Assembly (NCBI RefSeq): GCF_001194135.2
Contig: NC_068991.1
Span: 27,460,849 to 27,497,179 of the forward strand
Length of the DNA stretch: 36,331 nucleotides
Reading direction: 5' to 3'
From: Octopus bimaculoides
Lineage: Eukaryota
Each line of letters begins with the position of its first letter. Within the stretch, counting starts at the first letter, position 1. The notes beneath the pieces were generated by a model. The model made no database searches. It saw nothing but the letters and a program-made list of their open reading frames with translations, and was not told the origin of the DNA. Made by a program: the position numbers and the translations under genes. Shown here in pieces: positions 912 to 36,331 of the stretch.

Positions 912-1477
912 NNNNNNNNNNTGATCGTAGCGTGTGAGGTTCTCTTATATAGCGTGTGAGGTTCTCATTGAAAACGGGATATATTGGAAGTGGTAGTAGT
1001 AAAATAGAAAAAAAGAAACATTTACAGTCATAAAGTAATAAATAAGGAGAAAGAGAGTTGCTTTGATTTAACGAAATATTTCTGACCAATATTTCAGTAA
1101 ATATTTCTAAGTATCTGAAAAACGTCAAAAATTTTAATTTGTTTCTTTTACTCAATATTTTAAGCATTTAGTTTTACCGAAATAGGGCATGAGAGTAGGA
1201 GTATATACGTCTGTGTGTGGTATGTGCGTGTTTATGGCGTTTACATGTTTACATGTATACATATATATAATTGCAGCGTGGAAGGTGTTTATAAGCCATT
1301 TAAGAAATACACAAAAACCGTTAGATTCACGTCAACATTTAAATTTAAATGTTGAAGTAAATCTGACGGGTTTTTTTTGTTTCTTAAATGGCATATAAAC
1401 ACCTTCCACGTTGCAATTGGTTTCGTTTCAGCACACGATCTAAGATCAAGTCACTTACTATTTTCAAACCTTCTTTC

Positions 1478-2938: not shown

Positions 2939-3790
2939 TTAGGTCATTAAGAACAAAACGTCCGATTTTCTTATGCAACATTGAAGAGTTATGTCATCAC
3001 TATTCGAAATGCAATTCATAGTGTCTGATTATATTGTTTTCTCTTGTAAATCAATTTTTATGAACCCATGGATAGACAAAAAATATGTGTTTATCAATAT
3101 GAGTTCCATCGTAGAATCAATGCATCCCGGACAGCTCGAAACATCATTGAGGTGTGTGATGTAGTTGTGGCGAATGAGCACACTGTACGTCAATGGTTTG
3201 AGAAGTTCCGCTCTGGTGACTTTACTCTTGATAATCATCCCCGTGGTAGACCTGAGACCAAGGTGAATAATGATGAGCTGGAAACTGTAGTAGAAGCGGA
3301 TATATCTCAAACTATGCGTGAGTTAGCAGCAAGGTTTGATGTTTGGATTCCAACTATATTGGACCACCTGAAATAAATCGGCAAAGTAAAGAAGCTGGAC
3401 AAGTGGGGACCACACGGACTGAACGAGCATCAAGTGACACGCTGTCTTGAAACTTGTTGTTCTTTGCTGTCACGGCATAAAGAGAACCATTTTTATATTG
3501 TATTGTTACGTGCGACGAAAAATGGATTCTTTTCAACAATGGCAATCGTTCTACACGTTGGTTGGATAGAGACAAAGTGCCAAAACACAATCCAAGAAAG
3601 AATATTCACCAAAAAAGGTTAATGGTGTCTGTTTGGTGATCCAGAGCTGGTGTCATCCACGACAGCTTCATGAGACCTTGTAGGCAATTACAGCAGTTGT
3701 ATACATCAACTAATTAGATGAAATGATAAGTGAATTGCAATTAAACAACCAATATTAGTCAATATAATCAGGTCAATTCTCTTGGAGAAA
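2939..3790 (+). mobile_element. Mariner transposon remnant (transposase pseudogene)
   Basis: TA|ttaggtc TIR-like start. ORF 3068-3376 has the mariner N-terminus (YEF...TARNI...TVRQWFEKFRSGDF.L...RGRP), then after a stop IGKVKKLDKWGPH (WVPHEL-like) and TCDEKWI (first catalytic Asp). Confidence 0.9.
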
Positions 3791-6970: not shown

Positions 6971-7189
6971 GGCATATACATGTACAAATATTGACATATA
7001 TACTCCCATACTTACTTCTCCTTCCCACTTTCCGTAACCACGTGACCGATTTCCTGTCTATCATGCAGTCGATTTCCTGCTCACCATGCGGTTTTCTCCA
7101 AGTAATTGTTGTCGCTGCAATACCAACATCAAACTGCCACACAATGTGACCTTTCTCGACCAATCGCAGACTATCGTCCAGTAGTAAGG

Positions 7190-7384
7190 AATGCGATCGG
7201 AGATAGAAAAGATACGTAATGGGTGTATGTGCATATTTCAAGTCTTATTGCCCTTTCATCAGAACTACATCCAACGCATGATCTACCACATTGCTTAAAT
7301 ACCCACTGGTGCTGATGAAAGACCAATAACTCTACAAATGAGCATATACACCCATTACCTGTATTTTCTATCTTCGATCGCATT
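7190..7384. other. Imperfect inverted repeat, 76-bp arms, 43-nt loop
   Basis: 7190-7265 versus reverse complement of 7309-7384: gapless, 62/76 identical. Confidence 0.95.
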
Positions 7385-7808
7385 GGTTACATAGACGTTT
7401 TCGTTCACGTCCAAATACATTCATACATTGATACATTTTTCTTTATTTATATCACTTCAATTAGAATTTTGAGTTTACGCTCAAACAGAAATGTAATGTT
7501 ATAGGGTAACTTTATTAAACTTATTCTTTCTGACTAACTTAGCTCCAAACATCGTGATATGTCTATTCACGTATAATAATTCTAATATGGAAATACATGC
7601 AATATTCTTTCTACAACTAGGTCTTGCAAGAACATATAAATGAGTACGTTATGGTAAAATCTATCCTGTAGCAGTTTCACTTATTACTAAGTAACTCTAC
7701 ACATATACAAATTATCACGAAATTACATAATTTAGATAGATAGAAATATAATCATACTAATAATGATAATAAAACACCCTCAATAAACACATATATATAT
7801 ATATAAAT

Positions 7809-10455: not shown

Positions 10456-10660
10456 GGCTCCAAGGTTTTGCACAAGGCCATCAATTTTGGGGAAAGGTGT
10501 AAGTCTATTATATTGATCACTGTACTCAACTGGTATATATTTTATCGACCGCGAAAAGATGACAGGTAAACTTCGGCAGAATTTAAATTCAGATCATAAA
10601 GATGGACGAAATGAAGCTAAGCATTTTATCCGCATGTTAATGATTCTGCCAGCTCACCTT
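10456..10660 (+). mobile_element. SINE family A (octopus-type)
   Basis: 'actcaactggtatatattttatcgaccgcgaaaagatgacaggtaaacttcggcagaatttaaattcaga'; homologous to 34708-34900. Confidence 0.8.
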
Positions 10661-15476: not shown

Positions 15477-15690
15477 TAAGGCGGCGTGCTGGCAGAATCA
15501 TCGTCACACCGGGCAAAATGCTTAATGGACTTTCATCCGACTTTATATTCTGATTTCAAATTCTGCCGAGGTCGACTTTGTCTTTCATTCTTTTAGTGTT
15601 GATGAAATAAATACCAGTTGAACACGGGCCAATATAATCAACTGACAATCCTCACCCGAAATTGCTGGCCTTTTGCCAAAATTTGAAATC
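15477..15690 (-). mobile_element. SINE family A
   Basis: 'aaattctgccgaggtcgactttgtctttcattc' is the reverse complement of the family A core. Confidence 0.85.
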
Positions 15691-16133
15691 AATGTTAATA
15701 ATGAAGAATGGTTGAGCAATACTGTTACAGATATCATTATTGCTGATACCACGTAGTAGATGTGTGGATCGATGGACGAACGGACGAACGGGGGTCGGAC
15801 GGATAGACGAAGAGAAGTGAACTTTTCCGACCAACTTTAGGAATTTAACTCTATTCAGCAGTACATACCTCAAGAAGATTATGTCAAATGCACCAGCAAA
15901 TATATATCTATGGTTGTGTGTGTGGTGCTGTGTATTCTTATGTATATACGTGTACGCGCACATATGGATCTTCGTACTCTTTCGGACTCAATCTTCATGG
16001 ATCTCACTGGCTATCTTCGTCGAAGTAAATCGCTCTAATCTACCAGGACTTTTGAACTTTCTGAACTTGCGGAACTTTTAAACTCCTCATCCCCCATGTT
16101 AGACCACTGAAGTTTGCATATAATCAATGGAGA

Positions 16134-16193
16134 GCTCCTTACATACTGAATAACAGCATGTGTTTCCATGCTGTTATTCAGTATGTAAGGAGC
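16134..16193. other. Perfect 27-bp inverted repeat with 6-nt loop
   Basis: gctccttacatactgaataacagcatg-tgtttc-catgctgttattcagtatgtaaggagc. Confidence 0.98.
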
Positions 16194-16479
16194 ACTGCAT
16201 CCATTAGGATGTAAGTGAATATATATGAATATACGTCAGTTTTTTTCCTGAAGAGGTTTTTACCTTTTAAATTCATTATGCAATTTTAATTGTAAAATAT
16301 GAATGAAGGTGGGAATTGAAACGTGCGTAGGCGACAAGGAGTTGACTGCGTTCATACTCTTCATTTTCTTTATGTTATGTGTGTGTGTGTATACTTCTAA
16401 ATTAATTCTATTGAATTTTAATGGGCACTTTACTTTAAGATGTTGCCATGAATTTAGAAAGACATTGAGATAGCTCAAT

Positions 16480-17370
16480 TATTAATTATAATTTTTAATT
16501 ATTATATTATAAGGTTAATTCCTTTAATTATTATAAGGTGTTTCATAAAATGTGTAATAAATAGATATTTAATTATTTTATTCTGTTATGTCTGGGGAGA
16601 GTCATTCTCTTTTAGTGCCTTATAATTTAACATACTCACCTGTGAGTGTGTTAAATTGTAAGGCACTAAAAGAGAATGACTCTTCCTAGACACGAAAGAA
16701 TATGCTTCAGCACACGAACTCACATAAAGAATCTTGAAAACCAAATCCAAACACGAAATAATTATTTTGTTATTTTTATACTTTAGTTATCCAGCGAAGT
16801 CATCAATAATTATATATACTATTAATTATATTTTTCAATTATTATAAAATAAAGTTAATTCCTATAAAAGGGCTTAATATGATAAATAAATAGGAATTTA
16901 ATTATATGTGTTCTTTTTTCTTTAGTTATCCAGTGAAGTCATCAATATTTATACATATTATTAATTATAATAATTTTTCATTTATTATATATTAATGTTA
17001 ACTCCTATAAAAGTGTTTAATATATTAAATAAATAAACAATTATTGCGACGTAAAGTATCAAAGTTTCTATTAAGTATTACGGAGAAGTGATATTTGAAG
17101 TTTTTATTCTTTAGTAATCTATAAAGCACAACGTAAAATTCTTTTCTGTAGTTTTTATTTTTTAGTTATGCAGCGACGTCATCAATAATTGTATATCAAA
17201 ATATTCCTTTTTTGAGTCACATTTTTAGGTTATATTTTTCGAGCATTTTGTTTAGATTATTTTTCTATGTAGATTTCAAATTGTCGAAAAATATAGAATA
17301 TAGAATTAGTATGATATTTTCTATTTTTTATTTTTATAACGTAGGTTAGTTATTCAATGACGTCGTTATT
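16480..17370 (+). repeat. Degenerate AT-rich ~140-bp tandem repeat array
   Basis: Anchor 'ttagttatccagcgaagtcatcaata' at 16783, 16922, 17162 and (decayed) 17346; the 'aaggttaattcct' half-unit also occurs near 16510. Confidence 0.75.
16589..16692. repeat. 104-bp near-perfect palindrome
   Basis: Arms 16589-16639 and 16642-16692 differ at 4 positions. Confidence 0.97.
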
Positions 17371-18735: not shown

Positions 18736-19597
18736 TATATATAGCAAATGAAAGACGTCAGATGGAATATACGAGAATTTATTATTAATCACGGCAATTG
18801 TTTTGACACATCTAGCATCGATTCCTCATGGGTGGGACACTCAACAACTGGTTCAGGAGTATCCGGTGGTACAGATGTTATCTCGTTGGGTGATAGATAA
18901 ATATATCTCATTAAAATGACTGTTCCGCAATATAACTTTCCGTTTTGTAGAAAGAAAATCAGCCAGACGGAGGAAATATCTTCATTTATATAGAAGATCA
19001 AGAATAAAGTCACTGATGGCAAAAAGAGAAACGAACTCGCAATCCAGCGAGAAAAGTATTAAAAATAACCGTTAACAAATATGGACGTATAAACGCCCTC
19101 GAGTAAACTGCATGGCGCGAGTACACTCCCTCATACAAGCATCCGCAAAAATGCGAGGATACGCACACGTGAGGGTTTGGTGCACTCATGATCACAAAGC
19201 GAGTTAGTTACCTACTTGGTGTTTATAAGAATGGGGAGGTTAAAAGTAAACTTAAGCCATCCATACCTTAAATCAAATTAAATCAAGTTAACGGTTACTC
19301 AAAATTCATTCTCGTTGCATTGTGAGAAAGTATATTTATATGCGTGTATGCGTACAGGATGGTGTAGTGACTAAAAGAATTGGAAACATGATGTATTTAA
19401 TAAGCAGCCAACGATGGGAGCATAAACGATACCTAAATCAATTAAAAACAGACATCGAGAATAAAGGAAGGAAATTCCACTGGAGGTGTTTTACGACATG
19501 TTCGATGTGCCAGCACCAAAACAGAAAACGTAAGCGGAAGCAGAATTTCAAAAGGAGGAGTTATTGGAAAGAATAAGAATATTATTATTATTATTAC

Positions 19598-19824
<227 letters not shown>

Positions 19825-22529: not shown

Positions 22530-22727
22530 GACCAGCAATTTTGAAGGAATTCATTTAATCGACTCTGTCGATCCCAGTGCTTGACTAGTATTTTTTTTAT
22601 CTACTATAGAAAGTTCACAGGCAAAGGTGACCTCGGAATGAATTACATTCAAAACGTTAAGAATCGGAAGAAATGTCACAAGTTATTATTCCGACACGTG
22701 AACTATTCTGCCGGCTCACCGCCCTTT
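22530..22727 (+). mobile_element. SINE family A (decayed)
   Basis: 'gatcccagtgcttgactagtatt...ggcaaaggtgacctcggaatg...ttctgccggctcaccgccctt'. Confidence 0.7.
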
Positions 22728-23080
22728 TGGAAAAATTTAGGCAAAAACAACTAACTTTGACCCGAGAGGGTTAGTCGAAGTTCTGAAAATGAAAAACTTA
22801 ATGCAGAAGAAGCTAGTAATTTTGGAAGTAATATTTGGGATAAGCNNNNNNNNNNGCAAAGGTGACCTCGGAATGAATTACATTCAAAACGTTAAGAATC
22901 GGAAGAAATGTCACAAGTTATTATTCCGACACGTGAACTATTCTGCCGGCTCACCGCCCTTTTGGAAAAATTTAGGCAAAAACAACTAACTTTGACCCGA
23001 GAGGGTTAGTCGAAGTTCTGAAAATGAAAAACTTAATGCAGAAGAAGCTAGTAATTTTGGAAGTAATATTTGGGATAAGC
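22621..23080. other. 225-bp exact duplication across a 10-N gap (assembly artefact)
   Basis: 22621-22845 equals 22856-23080; Ns at 22846-22855. Confidence 0.9.
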
Positions 23081-25383
23081 CAGTCAATCGTAATGGAGAT
23101 TTAGTATGGTTAAAGTAAGTCGGGGAAGTAGTGAATGAGATGCAGCCAAATCTAAGACTAACTAGTGCATTAATGAGTAAACTTTTAGGGAAAATGCTGA
23201 ATTGGAAGGGCACATGACCAGATTTAATTCAAGGCTACTCACTAAAGAAATTTGGCAGTTTACATGGGAGGCTGAGGGAACAACTTCAGAGTTACCTAAA
23301 TAGAGGAATAATATCAGATTGGAACACTAGAGGGAAGACAATACTCCTTAGGAAAGATAAAAGCAAAGGTAATACAACTAGCAATTATAGACCAATCACT
23401 TGCTTATCATTAGTGTGGAAGCTGTTAATAGGAATGCTTTCAGAAAGCATTTACGAGCAGCTTGACGACCAGAAGTTACTGCCAGAAGAACAGAAAGGTT
23501 ACAGGAGAAAGGCGAGAGGAGCGCATGCTTTTTTTATACAGAGACAAAGCAGTTCTAAAGGAAGTAAAAGCTATAAAGAAAACTCTAACAATAGCATGGA
23601 TAGATTATAGAAAAGATTATTACATGATCCCACACTCATGGATAAGTGAACGTTTGAGTATATTCAGTATAGCAGACATTAGGGAATTAATCACCTTTAG
23701 AATAAAGAAATGAGAAGTAGATCTTTACTCAGTTGACAGAGTATTAGGGAACGTTAATATCAAAAGAGGAATTTTCCAGGGAGACTCGTTGCCCCCTTTA
23801 ATATTTGTCTTATGTTTGATCCCCCCCTCTGTTTAGTATTTAGGAAGGCAAAGGCAGGGTATCGTCTGAGAAATCGTAAGGGGAAAATTAACCATTTGCT
23901 CTACATGGATGATCTGAAGCTTTTTAGTAAGAATGAAAAAGAGATAGATTCCTTAATACAGACTGTAAGACTCTTCAACAAAGATGAATTTGACATAGAT
24001 AAATGTGCAATGTTAGTCATGAGAATGAGACAGGTAGTCAACAGCGAAGGCGTCCAACTACCAGGTAGCCAGACATTAAAATGTTTGAAAGGAGGAGAGT
24101 GTTATGAGTATCTAGGAGTATTAGAATCTGACAAAGTACTAACTATAGAAATGAAAGCAAAAATTGAGAAGGAGTACAACAGAAGGGTGAGGAAACTAAT
24201 GAAGTCAAAGCTAAATGGCCTTAATCTAGTGAAGGCTTTAAATACTTTGCCAGTACCATTATTAGATACTCAACAGCTTTTGTAGGTAGGACAAAAACTG
24301 AATTAGCAAAGCTAGACAGAAGAATTAGGAAGGCATTCAAAATGAATGGCGGACTCCACCCGAGACCAGAAGTAGCAAGATTATATTTACCTAGAAAGGA
24401 AGTTGGAAGAGAGTTAATATCAGTAGAAGACTGTGTTGAGTGAGCTAGAGTAAATATAGACTCTTACGTACGAGAAGGTTTGTTAAAAGTTGCTTGGATC
24501 ACAGCAAGACAAGGAAACCAAAAACCCAAACGAAGTTAAAAACCTAAAAAAAAACTGAAATTATCTGACTGGCAGAAGGCGTTGCGTGGTAGATTCCCTA
24601 AGATAGTTGCAGCAAATAGAAGTAGTGAGACGAGGTTGTGGTTGCAGAAAGGACAGCTGAAAAAGGAGACAGAGAATTTGTTAGTAGCAGCACAGGATCA
24701 AGCATTAAGGACTAATTGGATAAAAGCCAAGATAGACAAAAACGAAGCGGATTCCCAGTGTAGGTTATGCAAATCAAAAGAGGATAGCATTACTCATATA
24801 GTAAGTGAATGTAGCATGCTGACACGGAAAGAATGCAAGATATGACAAACTAGGGAGAGTAATCCACTGGGTGTTATGTAGAAAGCTAGAATTTGAACAT
24901 ATTGATAAGTGGTATGAACATGAACTTAGTAAAATACTATAAGGTAAGAAATACGAGATGCTGTGGGACTTCAACATTCAGACTGACAGAGTAATAGAAG
25001 CTAGAAGGCCTGATTTAGTAGTAGTAGGTAAAGAGAGTAGAAAATGCCAGATAATTGACTTTACAGTCTCACGTGATGAGAAAATCAATATGAGAGGTAT
25101 AGAAAAAATAGCAAAGTACCAGATCCTAGCTATTGCACTACAGAGACTATGGGAATTGTTGGTAAAATGTAACCAAGTAGTTATAAGTGCATTAGGAACT
25201 ATCCTTAAAGATTTGAACAGATGGCTAGTGGAAATAGGCATAAAACCCAGTTTAGTACAGCTCCAGAAAACAGTGTTAGTAGGGACAGCTGGGATACTTA
25301 GGAGAGTTCTTGGCATCTAAGTTTACTTGTTTAGCCCAATATTAGTTTTTTTTCTTTTCCAACAGTATAATCTGTTGTGCGTA
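23018..25383 (+). mobile_element. 5'-truncated R4/Dong-clade non-LTR retrotransposon, copy 1 (pseudogenised RT, CCHC, RLE)
   Basis: NYRPITCL, EEQKG, IPHSWI, RGIFQGDSL and NHLLYMDDLKL (YMDD at 23902); CRLC...H.VSEC knuckle near 24759; LWDFNIQTDRVIEARRPDL...IIDF...EKIAKY restriction-like endonuclease; stop at 25320. Multiple stops and frameshifts. Confidence 0.92.
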
Positions 25384-25474
25384 GAAGAAGAAGAAGAAGA
25401 AAAAGAAGAAGAAGAAGAAGAAGAAGAAGAAGAAGAAGAAGAAGAAGAAGAAGAAGAAGAAGAAGAAGAAGAAG

Positions 25475-25512
<38 letters not shown>
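25384..25512 (+). repeat. Compound microsatellite (GAA)31(CAA)12
   Basis: Counted directly; one AAA interruption in the GAA tract. Confidence 0.97.
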
Positions 25513-26085
25513 ATCAGTAGCAACAGAATTGATTATTTAACACAGGGTAGAGGAGATTTTATAACCAAATAAATAGGGGAGAAGAAAGTACTGAAGATGA
25601 GATACTTAATGCAGAAGAAGTTAGAAAGTGTGGGCGTAATATTTGATATAAGCCAGTCAATCATAATGGAGATGCAGTATGATTAAAGAAAGTGAGGGAA
25701 GAAGTGAGTGCGAAGCAGCCAGACCTCAGACTAACTACTTCATTAATGAGTAGGGTTTGTAAAAATGCCTAATTGGAAAGACCCTGGACCAGATTTAATT
25801 CAAGAGTGCTGGCTAAAGAAATCTTGTATATTCAGTATAGCAGACAACATTAGAGAATTAATCACCTTTAGCATGAAGAAATGGAAAGTAGCTCTCGATT
25901 CAGGTGACAAAGTCTTGGGAAAAATTAAATTCAAAAGAGGAATTTTTCAAGGAGACTCGTTAATCCCTTTAATATTTGTCTTATGTTTGATCCCCATTAG
26001 TTTGGTATTAAAGAAGGCAAAGGCAGGGTGTCGGTTCAGAAATAGTAAGGGGAAAATTAACCATTTGCTCTACATGGATGATCTT
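25513..26085 (+). mobile_element. R4/Dong-clade element, copy 2 (internally deleted, ends at YMDDL)
   Basis: QN*LFNTG*RRFYNQIN...MPNWKDPGPDLIQ, then a deletion, then KRGIFQGDSL...NHLLYMDDL. Collinear with copy 1. Confidence 0.9.
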
Positions 26086-26337
26086 GTCAAAAAACGAAAA
26101 CTACTTAAAAACGAACAAACAAATCATGCAGAAGATAGATGTCTTCAATTGATAATGTTCTTAGACTCAAACAAGAACATCACCTTGTATAATTCTTGAA
26201 CCTGTTGTTTCTCACTGGTCTTTCAAATCTTGCTTTATCGCTTATTAGACTTTAACAATCGCTCAGAATATTGGTATACATCCAGAGAATATCATGTAAA
26301 TCGAAATTAAATCCTTAACCCTTTTTTCGTTTTGCAC
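26080..26337 (+). repeat. Unclassified dispersed repeat, copy 2
   Basis: Homologous to 20405-20670. Confidence 0.85.
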
Positions 26338-31822: not shown

Positions 31823-32733
31823 TCCAGCCTTTGGAATGTCATCTTCGCTGTATGTGGTTGAGCTTTACCCTGATGGAAGAATACCAAAGATGGTCGTTTT
31901 TCTTCTAGCGCTGACTTAAGCCACTGAAGCTTCTCGCAGTAGTTCTCTTTGTTATCGTTTGGTTTGGGTTCAAAAGTTTCAAGTGGACTAAATCTTTCAT
32001 GCATCACCAAATAGATAACAACACCTTTCGTGGGTGACGACTTTTTTTTAGCCTGGGGTGCCGTTGTTTCTCCTTTCCCTACCCACTGTTTTCGGTGCTG
32101 AACATTTTTATAGAGAGTTCATTTCTCGTCACCAGTCACTATTCGGTCCAAAAAAGGTTCATTCGTGAGACGTGACATCAAAGAAGAGCACACATTCACT
32201 CTCTGCATGCGATTAGACTCTGAAGGTTTATGAGGAACCCATTGACCCAACTTGCTGACTTTTCCGATGACACGCAGGTATCGACGAATGACTGAATGAC
32301 CAAATCCAAGCTTCTCTGCTAGTTCGTCAACAGTTACGATGGGATTTTGTTCCACCAGGGTTTGCAGGACGTCCTCGTCGAGGTTTACATGTCTTCCAGG
32401 ACGAGGCTCGTCTTCTATGCTGTAGTTTCCGGCTCGGAATTTCTGAAACCACCGATGACACAGGATTATTGTACGATCCCCATATACTGCGTTAATATTC
32501 ATCACACTTTCCGTTGCGTTGCAGCCTTCATTAAACTCATTAAGCAGAATATGCCGAACATGCTCCTTTGTCAATTCCCCTTTATAGCTTTGGAAACATA
32601 ATTGTTAAAATCGAACTGCACTCTTGAAAACTTGAACTAAAAATAAGGACAAGGTAAAAGTTGATGCAGGTAGTTTACCCAGACTTTTAGTTCATGCAAT
32701 TGAAAAAACCGCATTATTTATGGGATGACCCAA
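31823..32733 (-). mobile_element. Mariner transposase pseudogene with 5' TIR
   Basis: TA|ttgggtcatcccataa TIR. ORF 32119-32574 MTKEHVRHILL...WVPHKP...RIVTGDEK*, with the conserved W mutated to a stop, continuing to ...VFFHQGKAQPH (HDNA motif decayed). The 3' end lies in the gap. Confidence 0.93.
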
Positions 32734-34707
32734 TACATATATGTTTACTTATATATAAACATATATATGTAAGTATATATACATGTATGTATATATATGT
32801 ATATATATATATATGTATATAGATACACACACACATACAATATATATACACATATATATGTACATATATGTGTACTTATTCATATATAAATATAAATATA
32901 TATGTATATTTATATATGTGTGTGTGTGCGTGTGTGTGTGTATGTATGTGTATATATATACATACACATATATTACACAGATATACACACACACACACAC
33001 ACATATNNNNNNNNNNNNNNNNNNNNNNNNNNNNNNNNNNNNNNNNNNNNNNNNNNNNNNNNNNNNNNNNNNNNNNNNNNNNNNNNNNNNNNNNNNNNNN
33101 NNNNNNNNNNNNNNNNNNNNNNNNNNNNNNNNNNNNNNNNNNNNNNNNNNNNNNNNNNNNNNNNNNNNNNNNNNNNNNNNNNNNNNNNNNNNNNNNNNNN
33201 NNNNNNNNNNNNNNNNNNNNNNNNNNNNNNNNNNNNNNNNNNNNNNNNNNNNNNNNNNNNNNNNNNNNNNNNNNNNNNNNNNNNNNNNNNNNNNNNNNNN
33301 NNNNNNNNNNNNNNNNNNNNNNNNNNNNNNNNNNNNNNNNNNNNNNNNNNNNNNNNNNNNNNNNNNNNNNNNNNNNNNNNNNNNNNNNNNNNNNNNNNNN
33401 NNNNNNNNNNNNNNNNNNNNNNNNNNNNNNNNNNNNNNNNNNNNNNNNNNNNNNNNNNNNNNNNNNNNNNNNNNNNNNNNNNNNNNNNNNNNNNNNNNNN
33501 NNNNNNNNNNNNNNNNNNNNNNNNNNNNNNNNNNNNNNNNNNNNNNNNNNNNNNNNNNNNNNNNNNNNNNNNNNNNNNNNAGAGAGAGAGAAAAAGAATA
33601 TAGGATAAAGTGGAAGACAAAAGAAAGCATTTAGAGTATAAATTGCCCTTGGAATAAATCATTTTCGTATGGAATATATGAATGTTTTTGGAATATCATT
33701 TACATATTGAATATAGAACTACATATTAATATGGATAAAGGTATGTTTATACCTTTATGTTAGTATTTTATATAAACATTATTTGCTGTTTGCAAACACA
33801 TGTTAACACAACCCAGCTCCATTCACTCATTCACGCACATATATACAGAATAGAGAATGGAAGGAGCGTGATACATGTATACACACACGCACACACACAT
33901 ACGCATGCACATAGTCACACACACACACATTTATTTATATGTATGTACATACATACATTCATGTTTGAATGCATACCTATAGATAGTCAGAAAGATTGAT
34001 AGACTGAGAGACAGACAGACAGATAGGGGAAACGATTCTCTTTAGCTAGCCTCTAATCACGACGGAAACGTAAGTATACTATATTCCCAGCATGGCTCTT
34101 ATTGTATATATGTTATGTGTGTCTTTATAAGAGCACAAAAATATAAGTGTGTGTGTGTGTGTGTGTGTTTGTATTGATGAGTTATATAGTTATTAAATTT
34201 GCTGTTACTGGGCAGCAAAGCTGAATACCCTTTTCTCTGGAATGTGATGCATCTTGGAGTAGCTACATTAACCTGTCAACGTTATTGGTCACTTTTGATT
34301 TGCTGGATATATATTCATGCATAATTTTCTACTGATATTAGGGTTGTTTTTTCCCTAAAATTTCTGTTTATATAGATAAATTCATCAACTCCTTTGTCAC
34401 AGGGTAGCTGTAGACTACGAAACCCTACTGAGGAGTATTTTCATCATCCCTTCAGATCGTTTTTTTAATGAGTGCATACTTGATTGATTCGTTTTTTTCC
34501 GTATTGTTCAGCAGATGTCTGTGATATAAAGCAACATATAAATCATTTAGACTAACCTAATGCCTCTACATCCGTCTCCCTACCAATCATTTCTGCCAAG
34601 GCCACTAATGCCATGGAAGTTACCAGTAGGTGATAATATCTTCCTTGTTGTCATATCTTTGTTGCGTATATCTTTATTTACCAAATTGTCCAATTTACCA
34701 AGTATTG

Positions 34708-34900
34708 GTTTCAAATTTTGGCTCAAAGCCAGTAATTTCGGGGATGGTGTAGGTCAATTACATCAACCCCAGTACTCAACTGGTAATTATTGTATCGACC
34801 CCGAAAGGATGAAAAGCAAAGTCGACCTCGACAGCATTTGAACTCAGAACGCACAGATGGAGGAAATGCTGCTATGCATTTTCCACGGAACGCTAGCTTC
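34708..34900 (+). mobile_element. SINE family A
   Basis: 'tatcgaccccgaaaggatgaaaagcaaagtcgacctcgacagcatttgaactcagaacg'. Confidence 0.88.
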
Positions 34901-35680
34901 AGTTTTCCAAATATTAGTAACAGATCTGGTATTGCAAAAGTGTTATGGTATATGTTCTTATTAAATAGACATCTATGGCTACCGTAGCTTCCGCTGTCTG
35001 CTGAGGTAATTTTTTATCATTTTAGCATAACTGACAGCACTAACATATGGAACATCTTCATGAACTTTGAGATATTTGTAGCTTTTGACATTGGAAATAT
35101 GGTGGATACATAGGTCATTGGTATCCATATTCGTGCTTTTGTCAATTATTTTTCTTAGTTTACATGTGAGTAGGAATAAGTATAGAGAAAAAATACACAC
35201 ACGCGTACAGACAAATGATCGTACACGTAACTTCACTGAGGAACACATACAGTCACACATGACACAATGTACCACGCATACAAAAACGACATCGCCACAC
35301 TTCTGACAAGCCAACACACATACACAAAATAACACCGACACGCAGAGAGACACATACCTGTCCTCTCATGTTCACTCTCCTGCCCAGAATTACTCCACAA
35401 CCTTACTCCATATCCCCGGTCAATTAGCAGCTCAACACCACAAGGGCTTTTGATGTGGAATCGGGTATTTGTTTCTTTTTTCGCTTTCTTTTACTATTTC
35501 CATCAGTTTTCCATTATCCGAAAAATACCAATTCCTAAAATGTCATAGCCATTGACATACATACATATATATGTATGTATGTATGTATATATANNNNNNN
35601 NNNTGTGTGTGTGAGTGTATGTAGTAAAGCGAGTTGCCAAATCAATGTGGTAGTTCAATGGTGCTACTAGTTTTCGGCAG

Positions 35681-35973
35681 AACGCTCTGGATCATTTATA
35701 TACAATATCGATAGCAGGGGGGAGCGAGCTCCTACTACCCTCCAGCAGTTAGCAGGATTACGGAACTGGTTCAGATTCGAGCTGTTTGGCACATCCTCAG
35801 CCGCGTTAGCGGAACCTGATCTAAGCTGTAACTCCAGTGCGCCGGTGCTCGCGGTTGAGGATGGGCTAAGCAGCACGAAACTGAGTCATCCCGCTATCCC
35901 GTTAGCTGCTGGAATGTACTAGGGATTCGATTCCCCTGCTACCGATGTATTGTATATAAAGAGTGCAGAGCGT
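35681..35973. other. 293-nt rod-like imperfect inverted repeat
   Basis: 35681-35809 versus reverse complement of 35846-35973: 99/126 aligned positions identical, 3 small indels, 36-nt loop. Confidence 0.95.
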
Positions 35974-36331
35974 TATATAGATAAAGGGTGCCTGGGGCTA
36001 AACAAGCATCAACATTCAACTGCCACTTGCGATTTTATAACTAGCTATTTTGCTTGCTATATATATATATTATACACATGTAAATATGGTGTATGCTTGT
36101 ATGTGTGTATATATGCATGTGTCTGCATGTATATATTTATATATATACATACATTTATACATATATACATATATATATATACATACATATCTATACATAT
36201 ATACCCATATATATATATAAATATATACATACATACCCATATAAATATATACATACATACGCATGCATTAATACACACATACAAGCATACACCATACTTA
36301 CATGTGTATAATATATATATATATATATATA

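What the first reader, a model, noticed from the sequence alone, without database searches (positions are those of the whole stretch)
35681..35973. 293-nt GC-rich rod-like foldback of unknown family
Seen: arms pair over 126 positions with 99 Watson-Crick pairs and 27 mismatches (11 would be G-U on the + strand, 7 G-U on the - strand, 9 transversions), giving about 87% pairing as a + strand RNA. Mismatches are evenly spread (longest perfect run 12 bp), and all 5 transitions in the innermost ~45 bp are + strand G-U. It is 51% GC and CpG-rich in an AT-rich region. I found no TSD, TE motif or meaningful ORF. Established: interrupted rods are typical of hairpin-RNA endo-siRNA loci, ADAR substrates (coleoid cephalopods edit extensively, and A:C mismatches are favoured sites) and viroid-/HDV-like RNAs. 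Inference: it may be a structured RNA or a new non-autonomous foldback element rather than a neutrally decaying inverted duplication. The mismatch spectrum alone cannot decide this.
Basis: partly seen in the sequence, partly recalled or inferred. Interest (0 to 1): 0.72.

Follow-up and report, generated by a model that had tools for sequence, protein, structure and literature searches.

The report
Old GC-rich DNA foldback, decaying neutrally
This is a real 294-base inverted repeat in a repeat-rich animal scaffold, but its arms differ as unconstrained DNA would, four other foldbacks lie in the same 36 kb, and nothing marks it as a functional RNA, so it is most likely an ordinary decayed foldback repeat.

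Summary
Window 35681-35974 (294 nt, one base longer than reported) is an inverted repeat of two ~126-nt arms around a ~42-nt spacer. It has 95 Watson-Crick positions of 123 aligned, 28 mismatches and 3 small indels. The predicted RNA fold is -162 kcal/mol on + (z = -13.8) and -148 on - (z = -12.0).

The functional-RNA reading finds no support:
- G-U-compatible mismatches are 11 on + and 7 on - (p = 0.48).
- The transition share (0.64) matches ten other diverged repeat pairs in the window (0.55, p = 0.43).
- Mismatch spacing is as random.
- CpG observed/expected (0.93) is unremarkable once the 51.5% GC is allowed for.
- Rfam, ARAGORN and ribozyme motifs give nothing.

There is no target-site duplication and no second copy in the window. 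Four unrelated foldbacks of 86-207 nt lie in the same window, so the kind is common here.

Copy number could not be tested. No collection on hand demonstrably holds this genome: a control ORF from the window's own four-copy repeat also found nothing.

Best reading: a relic of a palindromic non-autonomous element, or of a one-off inverted duplication, drifting neutrally. If transcribed it would be a passive dsRNA substrate. Interest is low.

The parts
35681..35806 (.). Left arm of the inverted repeat (~126 nt, begins AACGCTCTG)
   Evidence: pairs with 35849-35974 at 95 of 123 aligned positions. nhmmer profile of the two arms hits only these two places.
35807..35848 (.). Spacer or loop (~42 nt), only weakly self-complementary
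   Evidence: the terminal region of the predicted hairpin is mostly unpaired. In one search the alignment breaks down into transversions here.
35849..35974 (.). Right arm of the inverted repeat (ends CAGAGCGTT)
   Evidence: It contains a B-box-like string near 35921-35931, but neither ARAGORN nor Rfam finds a tRNA.
35604..35680 (.). Left flank: unique sequence between a 10-N gap with (TG)n and the foldback. Not complementary to the right flank and has no TSD.
35975..36057 (.). Right flank: unique sequence up to a 266-nt palindromic TA/CA microsatellite block (36058-36323)

Best explanation
The locus is a non-functional DNA foldback. A ~126-nt GC-rich unit is present twice in inverted orientation around a ~42-nt spacer, and the two arms have since diverged independently by ordinary neutral substitution.

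The most likely origin (inference) is insertion of a palindromic, non-coding, non-autonomous element of the foldback or MITE-like kind, whose target-site duplication has since eroded or never existed. A one-off inverted duplication made during repair or replication is almost as likely.

Shown: the structure, its statistical significance, its foreign composition, and the neutral-looking mismatch spectrum.

Inferred:
- The origin.
- The age. Jukes-Cantor distance between arms is about 0.27, so about 0.135 per arm. That is roughly 35-40 My if the octopus calibration quoted in PMC13282606 applies and the arms were identical at birth.
- The consequence: if the locus lies in a transcribed region, the RNA will fold into a long imperfect duplex. 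It would then be a passive substrate for ADAR or Dicer, as inverted or palindromic repeats are in animals (PMC5625713), without having been selected for that.
For: Structure:
- It is real and significant.

No RNA-level selection signature:
- G:U-compatible mismatches are 11 on + and 7 on -, binomial p = 0.48.
- Transition fraction is 18/28 = 0.64 against 188/343 = 0.55 in ten other diverged repeat pairs of the same window, Fisher p = 0.43.
- Placement of mismatches, judged by the longest perfect run, is as in random permutations.
- There are 3 small indels.

No known RNA family:
- Rfam at gathering score over the whole window, and at E <= 10 over 35500-36100, gives nothing on the element.
- No tRNA.

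The kind is common here:
- Four other whole-length foldbacks lie at 1269-1418, 7184-7390, 16121-16206 and 16579-16702. Arm identities are about 79-90%. They are unrelated in sequence, and none shows strand asymmetry.

Foreign composition and sharp ends:
- GC is 51.5% against 34%, and complementarity stops abruptly at AACGC/GCGTT.

Not an artefact or contaminant:
- About 22% arm divergence argues against an assembly palindrome (inference).
- There is no E. coli, plasmid or phage match and no bacterial or archaeal genome match.

Literature:
- PMC5625713 reports an exceptionally high fraction of loci forming long dsRNA in the octopus genome, and a palindromic ~200-bp Harbinger repeat in Xenopus that self-folds and is hyper-edited.
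Against: - No orthologue or paralogue could be obtained, so conservation and covariation are untested. A neutral-looking spectrum between the arms of one copy has low power (28 mismatches) and cannot exclude weak selection for pairing.
- No TSD and no second copy in 31 kb of non-gap sequence, so the 'inserted element' origin is not demonstrated.
- GC 51.5% with undepleted CpG after about 22% divergence is slightly odd for old junk DNA. The window as a whole also has CpG observed/expected of 0.81, so CpG decay is weak in this genome.
- Transcription status is unknown.
Confidence: 0.68

Rival explanations
1. It is one member of a dispersed, possibly high-copy, palindromic MITE-like family. This is the ordinary-transposon version of the best explanation, with many copies in the genome.
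For: - Whole-length inverted repeat, small size, no coding capacity, sharp ends, and composition foreign to its surroundings.
- Mariner remnants and other foldbacks in the same window show a genome rich in class II debris.
- Palindromic MITEs that self-fold are documented (PMC5625713).
Against: - No TSD of 4 nt or more near either end.
- No other copy or arm-like fragment in the window, even with a profile search.
- 51% GC is atypical for MITEs.
- Zero hits in metagenome, viral and prokaryotic-genome pattern scans. These collections are not shown to hold the source genome, so this weighs little.
Confidence: 0.35
2. It is a one-off local inverted duplication, made by fold-back priming, template switching or hairpin-capped break repair. 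It was never mobile and has been decaying since.
For: - Single copy in the window.
- No TSD.
- A short spacer between the arms.
- A neutral spectrum.
Against: - Both arms are much more GC-rich than the surroundings. A purely local origin would need a pre-existing GC-rich patch.
- Four other foldbacks in 31 kb suggest a recurrent process or recurrent elements rather than a unique accident.
Confidence: 0.3
3. It is a functional long-hairpin RNA gene. Either it is an hpRNA-type endo-siRNA precursor, or it is a duplex maintained as an ADAR substrate.
For: - Very stable predicted rod on both strands, somewhat better on + (-162 against -148 kcal/mol).
- The five innermost transitions are all G:U on +.
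- The octopus genome is reported to hold an exceptionally high fraction of loci that can form long dsRNA, and to be heavily hyper-edited (PMC5625713).
Against: - The overall wobble asymmetry is not significant (p = 0.48).
- The transition/transversion ratio is like that of neutral repeats.
- 10 transversions and 3 indels disrupt the stem.
- No Rfam family.
- No homology to any gene that could be a target.
- Four unrelated foldbacks nearby show that such rods arise here without any function being needed.
Confidence: 0.06
4. It is a viroid-like, HDV-like or retrozyme-type element: a DNA copy of a rod-like circular RNA with self-cleaving ribozymes.
For: - Rod-like fold of about 300 nt with about 51% GC.
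Against: - No hammerhead, HDV-like, twister, hairpin or other ribozyme model matches, even at E <= 10.
- Not tandemly repeated.
- Embedded as a single copy in an animal scaffold between microsatellites.
- No match in 2.9 million viral contigs for three patterns.
Confidence: 0.01
5. It is an assembly artefact: a chimeric palindrome created by library preparation or scaffolding of a gap-rich draft.
For: - The window is a draft scaffold with 5125 N in 11 gaps.
- A 10-N gap lies 78 nt upstream of the foldback.
- A perfect 225-235-nt duplicate abuts another 10-N gap at 22621-23080.
Against: - Artefactual palindromes are near-perfect (established knowledge). These arms differ at 28 of 123 positions and by 3 indels.
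- The foldback lies wholly within contiguous sequence.
Confidence: 0.03

Closest known systems
Palindromic (self-folding) MITEs, e.g. the ~200-bp Harbinger-derived repeat of Xenopus tropicalis described in PMC5625713
   Same: - Short, non-coding, whole-length inverted repeat.
- Folds on itself into a tight long duplex with a short loop.
- If transcribed, it is a ready ADAR substrate without needing a neighbouring inverted copy.
   Different: - No TSD. PIF/Harbinger elements make a 3-bp one, and here the flanks are CAG and ATA.
- No further copies seen.
- 51% GC.
- The termini were not matched to those of any transposase superfamily. This rests on recollection of typical termini, not on a test.
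- Arms are about 22% diverged.
Foldback-type inverted-repeat elements and inverted pairs of dispersed repeats in animal genomes
   Same: - Long arms making up nearly the whole unit, a short spacer and no ORF.
- Several unrelated examples in the same window.
   Different: - Classical Foldback elements have arms built of internal tandem subrepeats and are usually much longer. No subrepeats are present here.
- The arms are not copies of the window's SINE-like repeat.
Drosophila-type hpRNA (endo-siRNA hairpin) loci
   Same: - A long imperfect hairpin on the scale of a hundred or more base pairs.
   Different: - hpRNAs are defined by Dicer-2-dependent siRNAs and by homology to target genes. Neither could be shown.
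- No target-like homologue was found.
- The mismatch pattern shows no strand preference.
Viroid-like RNAs and retrozymes
   Same: - Predicted rod of about 300 nt with moderately high GC.
   Different: - No ribozyme.
- No tandem copies.
- It is a single-copy stretch of scaffold DNA.

Membership tests
MITE (non-autonomous class II element) | Terminal inverted repeats | tested here: met
   Whole-length inverted repeat; the termini AACGCTCTG / CAGAGCGTT pair perfectly.
MITE (non-autonomous class II element) | Target-site duplication flanking the ends | tested here: not met
   No direct repeat of 4 nt or more within +/-8 nt of either end. Only chance-level 2-3-mers were found. Erosion with age cannot be excluded.
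MITE (non-autonomous class II element) | Multiple dispersed copies in the genome | not testable with these tools
   - None in the 36-kb window.
- No collection on hand is shown to hold the source genome.
- A control ORF from the window's own four-copy repeat also found nothing, so the nil results are uninformative.
MITE (non-autonomous class II element) | Small size and no coding capacity | tested here: met
   294 nt. Its ORFs have no Pfam hit or homologue.
hpRNA / endo-siRNA locus | Long intramolecular hairpin | tested here: met
   Predicted only: 115 pairs, -162 kcal/mol, z = -13.8.
hpRNA / endo-siRNA locus | Transcription and 21-23-nt small RNAs mapping to both arms | not testable with these tools
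   No expression data are accessible.
hpRNA / endo-siRNA locus | Pairing maintained by selection on the transcribed strand (excess of wobble or compensatory changes) | tested here: not met
   - G:U on + 11 against G:U on - 7, p = 0.48.
- Transition share equal to neutral repeats.
- Power is low with one copy.
Viroid-like / HDV-like / retrozyme | Self-cleaving ribozyme motif | tested here: not met
   No Rfam ribozyme family at E <= 10 on either strand of 35500-36100.
Viroid-like / HDV-like / retrozyme | Tandem or multimeric genomic copies, or circular RNA | tested here: not met
   Single copy, no tandem array. RNA circularity is not testable here.
tRNA-derived SINE | tRNA-like head with A and B boxes | tested here: not met
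   A B-box-like string lies near 35921-35931, but ARAGORN finds no tRNA and Rfam tRNA does not match at E <= 10. The arms are unrelated to the window's SINE-like repeat.
pre-miRNA | Hairpin of about 60-90 nt matching a known family | tested here: not met
   The only miRNA-model hits fall on the (TA/CA)n microsatellite at 35555-35623 and are far below gathering scores. The stem is about 126 bp.
ADAR substrate (works-like, not a family) | Long dsRNA plus clustered A-to-G mismatches in RNA reads | not testable with these tools
   The duplex is predicted. No RNA-seq is accessible.

The most novel reading that the evidence does not exclude
The foldback is a transcribed, selectively maintained long-hairpin RNA locus in a cephalopod-like genome. 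It would be either an hpRNA-type source of endogenous small RNAs or a dedicated long duplex engaging ADAR. Alternatively, it is the first seen copy of an undescribed GC-rich foldback family lacking TSDs.
Probability: 0.07. Interest if true: 0.5.

Novelty: new member of a known kind. Interest (0 to 1): 0.15.

Why it matters
As it stands it matters little. It is one more inverted repeat in a genome that, on the evidence of this window alone, carries about one foldback per 6 kb of non-gap sequence.

Its modest value is as an example of the raw material for long dsRNA in such genomes. If the source is an octopus, that fits the published observation that the octopus genome holds an exceptionally high fraction of loci able to form long dsRNA and is heavily hyper-edited (PMC5625713).

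It would become interesting only if orthologues showed covariation or small-RNA or editing data showed a discrete product.

Tried and rejected
1. Known RNA family. Rfam at gathering score over the whole window and at E <= 10 locally gave nothing on the element. The only hits were miRNA models on the neighbouring microsatellite. ARAGORN found 0 tRNAs.

2. tRNA-SINE idea, prompted by a B-box-like string in the right arm. Rejected. A shuffle-controlled Smith-Waterman comparison with the window's four-copy SINE-like repeat gave z between -1.6 and +2.4.

3. Other copies in the window. blastn with word size 7 and an nhmmer profile of the two arms at --max found only the two arms.

4. Copies elsewhere by DNA pattern. 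All returned 0:
- Two metagenome scans.
- Three viral scans.
- Two bacterial/archaeal genome scans.

5. Copies elsewhere through translated frames. All were nil:
- The search for homologous proteins on the 79-codon frame.
- The exhaustive search of 1.84 billion representatives.
- Exact look-up of the 69-aa ORF.
- Control: an ORF from the window's own repeated SINE-like element also found nothing. Exact look-ups of mariner and RT ORFs also failed. These databases therefore do not cover this genome's repeats, and the nil results say nothing about copy number.

6. Relatives of the window's mariner. They led to JGI sample 3300002938. Its two contigs share only the mariner with the window, at 81-85% nucleotide identity, and carry neither the SINE-like repeat nor the foldback. 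It is probably another organism.

7. Contamination or vector. blastn against E. coli genomes, plasmids and phages found no match.

8. TSD search over offsets of +/-8 nt and lengths 2-10 found nothing of 4 nt or more.

9. Hammerhead core by eye. One CTGANGA-like string lies on the - strand, but without the GAAA partner. Rfam agrees there is none.

10. A simulation from an idealised perfect palindrome was deliberately not made. The binomial, Fisher and permutation tests on the sequence as it stands were used instead.

11. The organism could not be identified. I recall the SINE-like repeat as resembling an octopus SINE, but that is memory and was not tested.

Full report
**1. The observation**

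The sequence at 35681-35974 is an inverted repeat running from AACGC to GCGTT.

A restricted inverted-repeat scan recovers it as four collinear arm pairs. Aligning the left arm to the reverse complement of the right arm gives 123 aligned positions, 95 of them complementary. There are 28 mismatches and three indels of 1-2 nt. The spacer is about 42 nt, at 35807-35848.

As RNA the + strand folds at -162.3 kcal/mol (shuffles -91.2 +/- 5.1, z = -13.8). The - strand folds at -148.2 kcal/mol (z = -12.0). The minimum-energy folds have 115 and 112 pairs.

GC is 51.5% against 34.2% for the window, the 99th percentile of 300-nt windows. CpG observed/expected is 0.93 against 0.81, only the 64th percentile. 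'GC-rich' is therefore right, and 'CpG-rich' is just a consequence of it.

**2. The setting**

The window is a draft eukaryotic scaffold. It has 5125 N in 11 gaps and many TA/CA/CT microsatellites. It also carries:
- Two mariner N-terminal remnants with Pfam HTH_48.
- Fragments of a reverse-transcriptase-bearing LINE.
- A SINE-like repeat in four copies.

I could not identify the organism. Exact look-ups of window ORFs are not on record. Mariner homologues at 64-79% identity come mainly from one JGI sample, 3300002938. Its contigs share only the mariner with the window. 'Cephalopod' therefore stays an assumption.

**3. Does the arm divergence show selection for an RNA structure?**

Every transition between paired positions gives G:U on one strand or the other. 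The counts are 11 on + and 7 on -, binomial p = 0.48.

As an internal neutral control I counted substitutions in ten other diverged repeat pairs of the same window. They gave 188 transitions and 155 transversions, a transition share of 0.55. The foldback gives 18 and 10, a share of 0.64, Fisher p = 0.43.

The longest perfect run lies within what random placement of the mismatches gives. Ten transversions and three indels break the stem.

Nothing departs from neutral decay. With a single copy and 28 differences the power is low, so weak constraint cannot be excluded.

**4. Is it a known RNA or element?**

- Rfam gives nothing at gathering score anywhere in the window. At E <= 10 over 35500-36100 it gives only sub-threshold miRNA-model hits on the adjacent microsatellite. 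That means no hammerhead, HDV-like or other ribozyme, and no tRNA, snRNA or miRNA on the element.
- ARAGORN finds no tRNA. A B-box-like string in the right arm led nowhere.
- The arms are unrelated to the window's SINE-like repeat.
- The arms match nothing else in the window or in the two fetched loci, by blastn or by an nhmmer profile.
- No TSD of 4 nt or more lies near either end.
- The longest open frames (69 and 79 codons) have no Pfam hit and no homologue.
- blastn against E. coli genomes, plasmids and phages finds nothing.
- Pattern scans of prokaryotic genomes, viral contigs and metagenomes find nothing.

**5. What the negative searches are worth**

As a control I searched the protein database with an ORF from the window's own four-copy repeat, which must be abundant in the source genome. 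It found nothing either.

The available collections therefore do not cover this genome's repeats. The nil results for the foldback say nothing about its copy number. This is the main limitation of the report.

**6. Base rate in the window**

A self-comparison of the window shows four further whole-length foldbacks:

| Coordinates | Length | Arm identity |
|---|---|---|
| 1269-1418 | 150 nt | 88% |
| 7184-7390 | 207 nt | about 79% |
| 16121-16206 | 86 nt | about 90% |
| 16579-16702 | 124 nt | about 88% |

They are unrelated in sequence to each other and to the finding. None has an obvious TSD (by eye, from the flanks printed). None shows +/- wobble asymmetry.

That makes five foldbacks in about 31 kb of non-gap sequence, spanning a range of arm divergence. 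The pattern looks like recurrent birth and neutral decay. The finding is simply the longest and most GC-rich of them.

This fits PMC5625713. That paper reports that the octopus genome has an exceptionally high fraction of loci able to form long dsRNA. It also describes a palindromic ~200-bp Harbinger repeat in Xenopus that folds on itself and is hyper-edited.

**7. Best explanation**

It is a non-functional DNA foldback, decaying neutrally (confidence about 0.68).

Origin is an inference. Either a palindromic non-autonomous element was inserted, which the foreign composition and sharp ends favour. Or a one-off inverted duplication occurred, which the single copy and absent TSD favour. I cannot separate these two here.

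The Jukes-Cantor distance between the arms is about 0.27, computed from 28/123. If the arms were identical at birth, and if the octopus calibration quoted in PMC13282606 applies (JC 0.09 about 25 My, 0.2 about 56 My), the event is some 35-40 My old. Both conditions are assumptions.

If the locus is transcribed, for instance inside an intron, the RNA would fold into a long imperfect duplex. It would be edited or diced passively.

**8. Rivals**

| Rival | Confidence | Main reason |
|---|---|---|
| Functional hpRNA or ADAR-substrate gene | about 0.06 | No positive evidence beyond the fold itself |
| Viroid-like or retrozyme | about 0.01 | No ribozyme, no tandem copies |
| Assembly artefact | about 0.03 | Arms too diverged |

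**9. Novelty and score**

The sequence has no known family, but the kind is well known, so it is a new member of a known kind. Interest is 0.15. The most novel reading not excluded is a selected long-hairpin RNA locus or an undescribed TSD-less GC-rich foldback family, with probability about 0.07.

Noticed in passing
window 1269-1418, 7184-7390, 16121-16206, 16579-16702: Four other whole-length foldbacks (150, 207, 86 and 124 nt; arm identity about 79-90%). They are unrelated in sequence to each other and to the finding. None has an obvious TSD or +/- wobble asymmetry. That is about one foldback per 6 kb of non-gap sequence.
   Followed up: partly
window 1427-1438 and 16706-16717: Two of those foldbacks (1269-1418 and 16579-16702) are each followed, 8 and 3 nt downstream, by the same 12-mer TTCAGCACACGA. 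Identity is 19 of 24 over the next 24 nt. These are the only two such 12-mers in the window. This is unexplained. It might be a hairpin-plus-tail end of some element.
   Followed up: partly
window 34704-34888, 15509-15693 (-), 10466-10653, 19584-19721: A SINE-like dispersed repeat of about 185 nt in four copies at 72-75% identity. One copy lies 800 nt upstream of the finding but is unrelated to it. An ORF across it has no hit in the 5.8-billion-protein database.
   Followed up: partly
window 3068-3376 (+) and 32119-32574 (-): Two mariner transposase N-terminal remnants (Pfam HTH_48, E = 3e-9 and 3e-13). Relatives at 64-79% amino-acid identity and 81-85% nucleotide identity sit on eukaryote-like contigs of JGI metagenome sample 3300002938.
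   Followed up: partly
window 23462-26199 (+): Broken non-LTR retrotransposon.
- Weak RVT_1 fragments, duplicated in part: 25586-26084 resembles 23013-23915 at 80-85%.
- A CCHC-type motif in ORF 24582-24845.
- ORF 24958-25320 has a sub-threshold Pfam hit to L_protein_N (24.3 bits, cut-off 27).
- I read that hit as a PD-(D/E)XK-type endonuclease of an R2/R4-like LINE (inference).
   Followed up: no
window 22621-23080: A 225-235-nt unit repeated in tandem at 100% identity. The second copy starts right after the 10-N gap at 22846-22855. This is probably a gap-closing or scaffolding artefact.
   Followed up: no
window 36058-36323: A 266-nt block of TA/CA microsatellite that is itself a palindrome (arms of 132 nt, 83% complementary), directly downstream of the finding. 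A similar block lies at 551-911. These are low-complexity foldbacks, distinct from the GC-rich one.
   Followed up: no
window, whole: 14% of the window is N (5125 bases in 11 gaps, three of them exactly 10 N). Any statement about what is absent from the window applies to about 31 kb only.
   Followed up: yes
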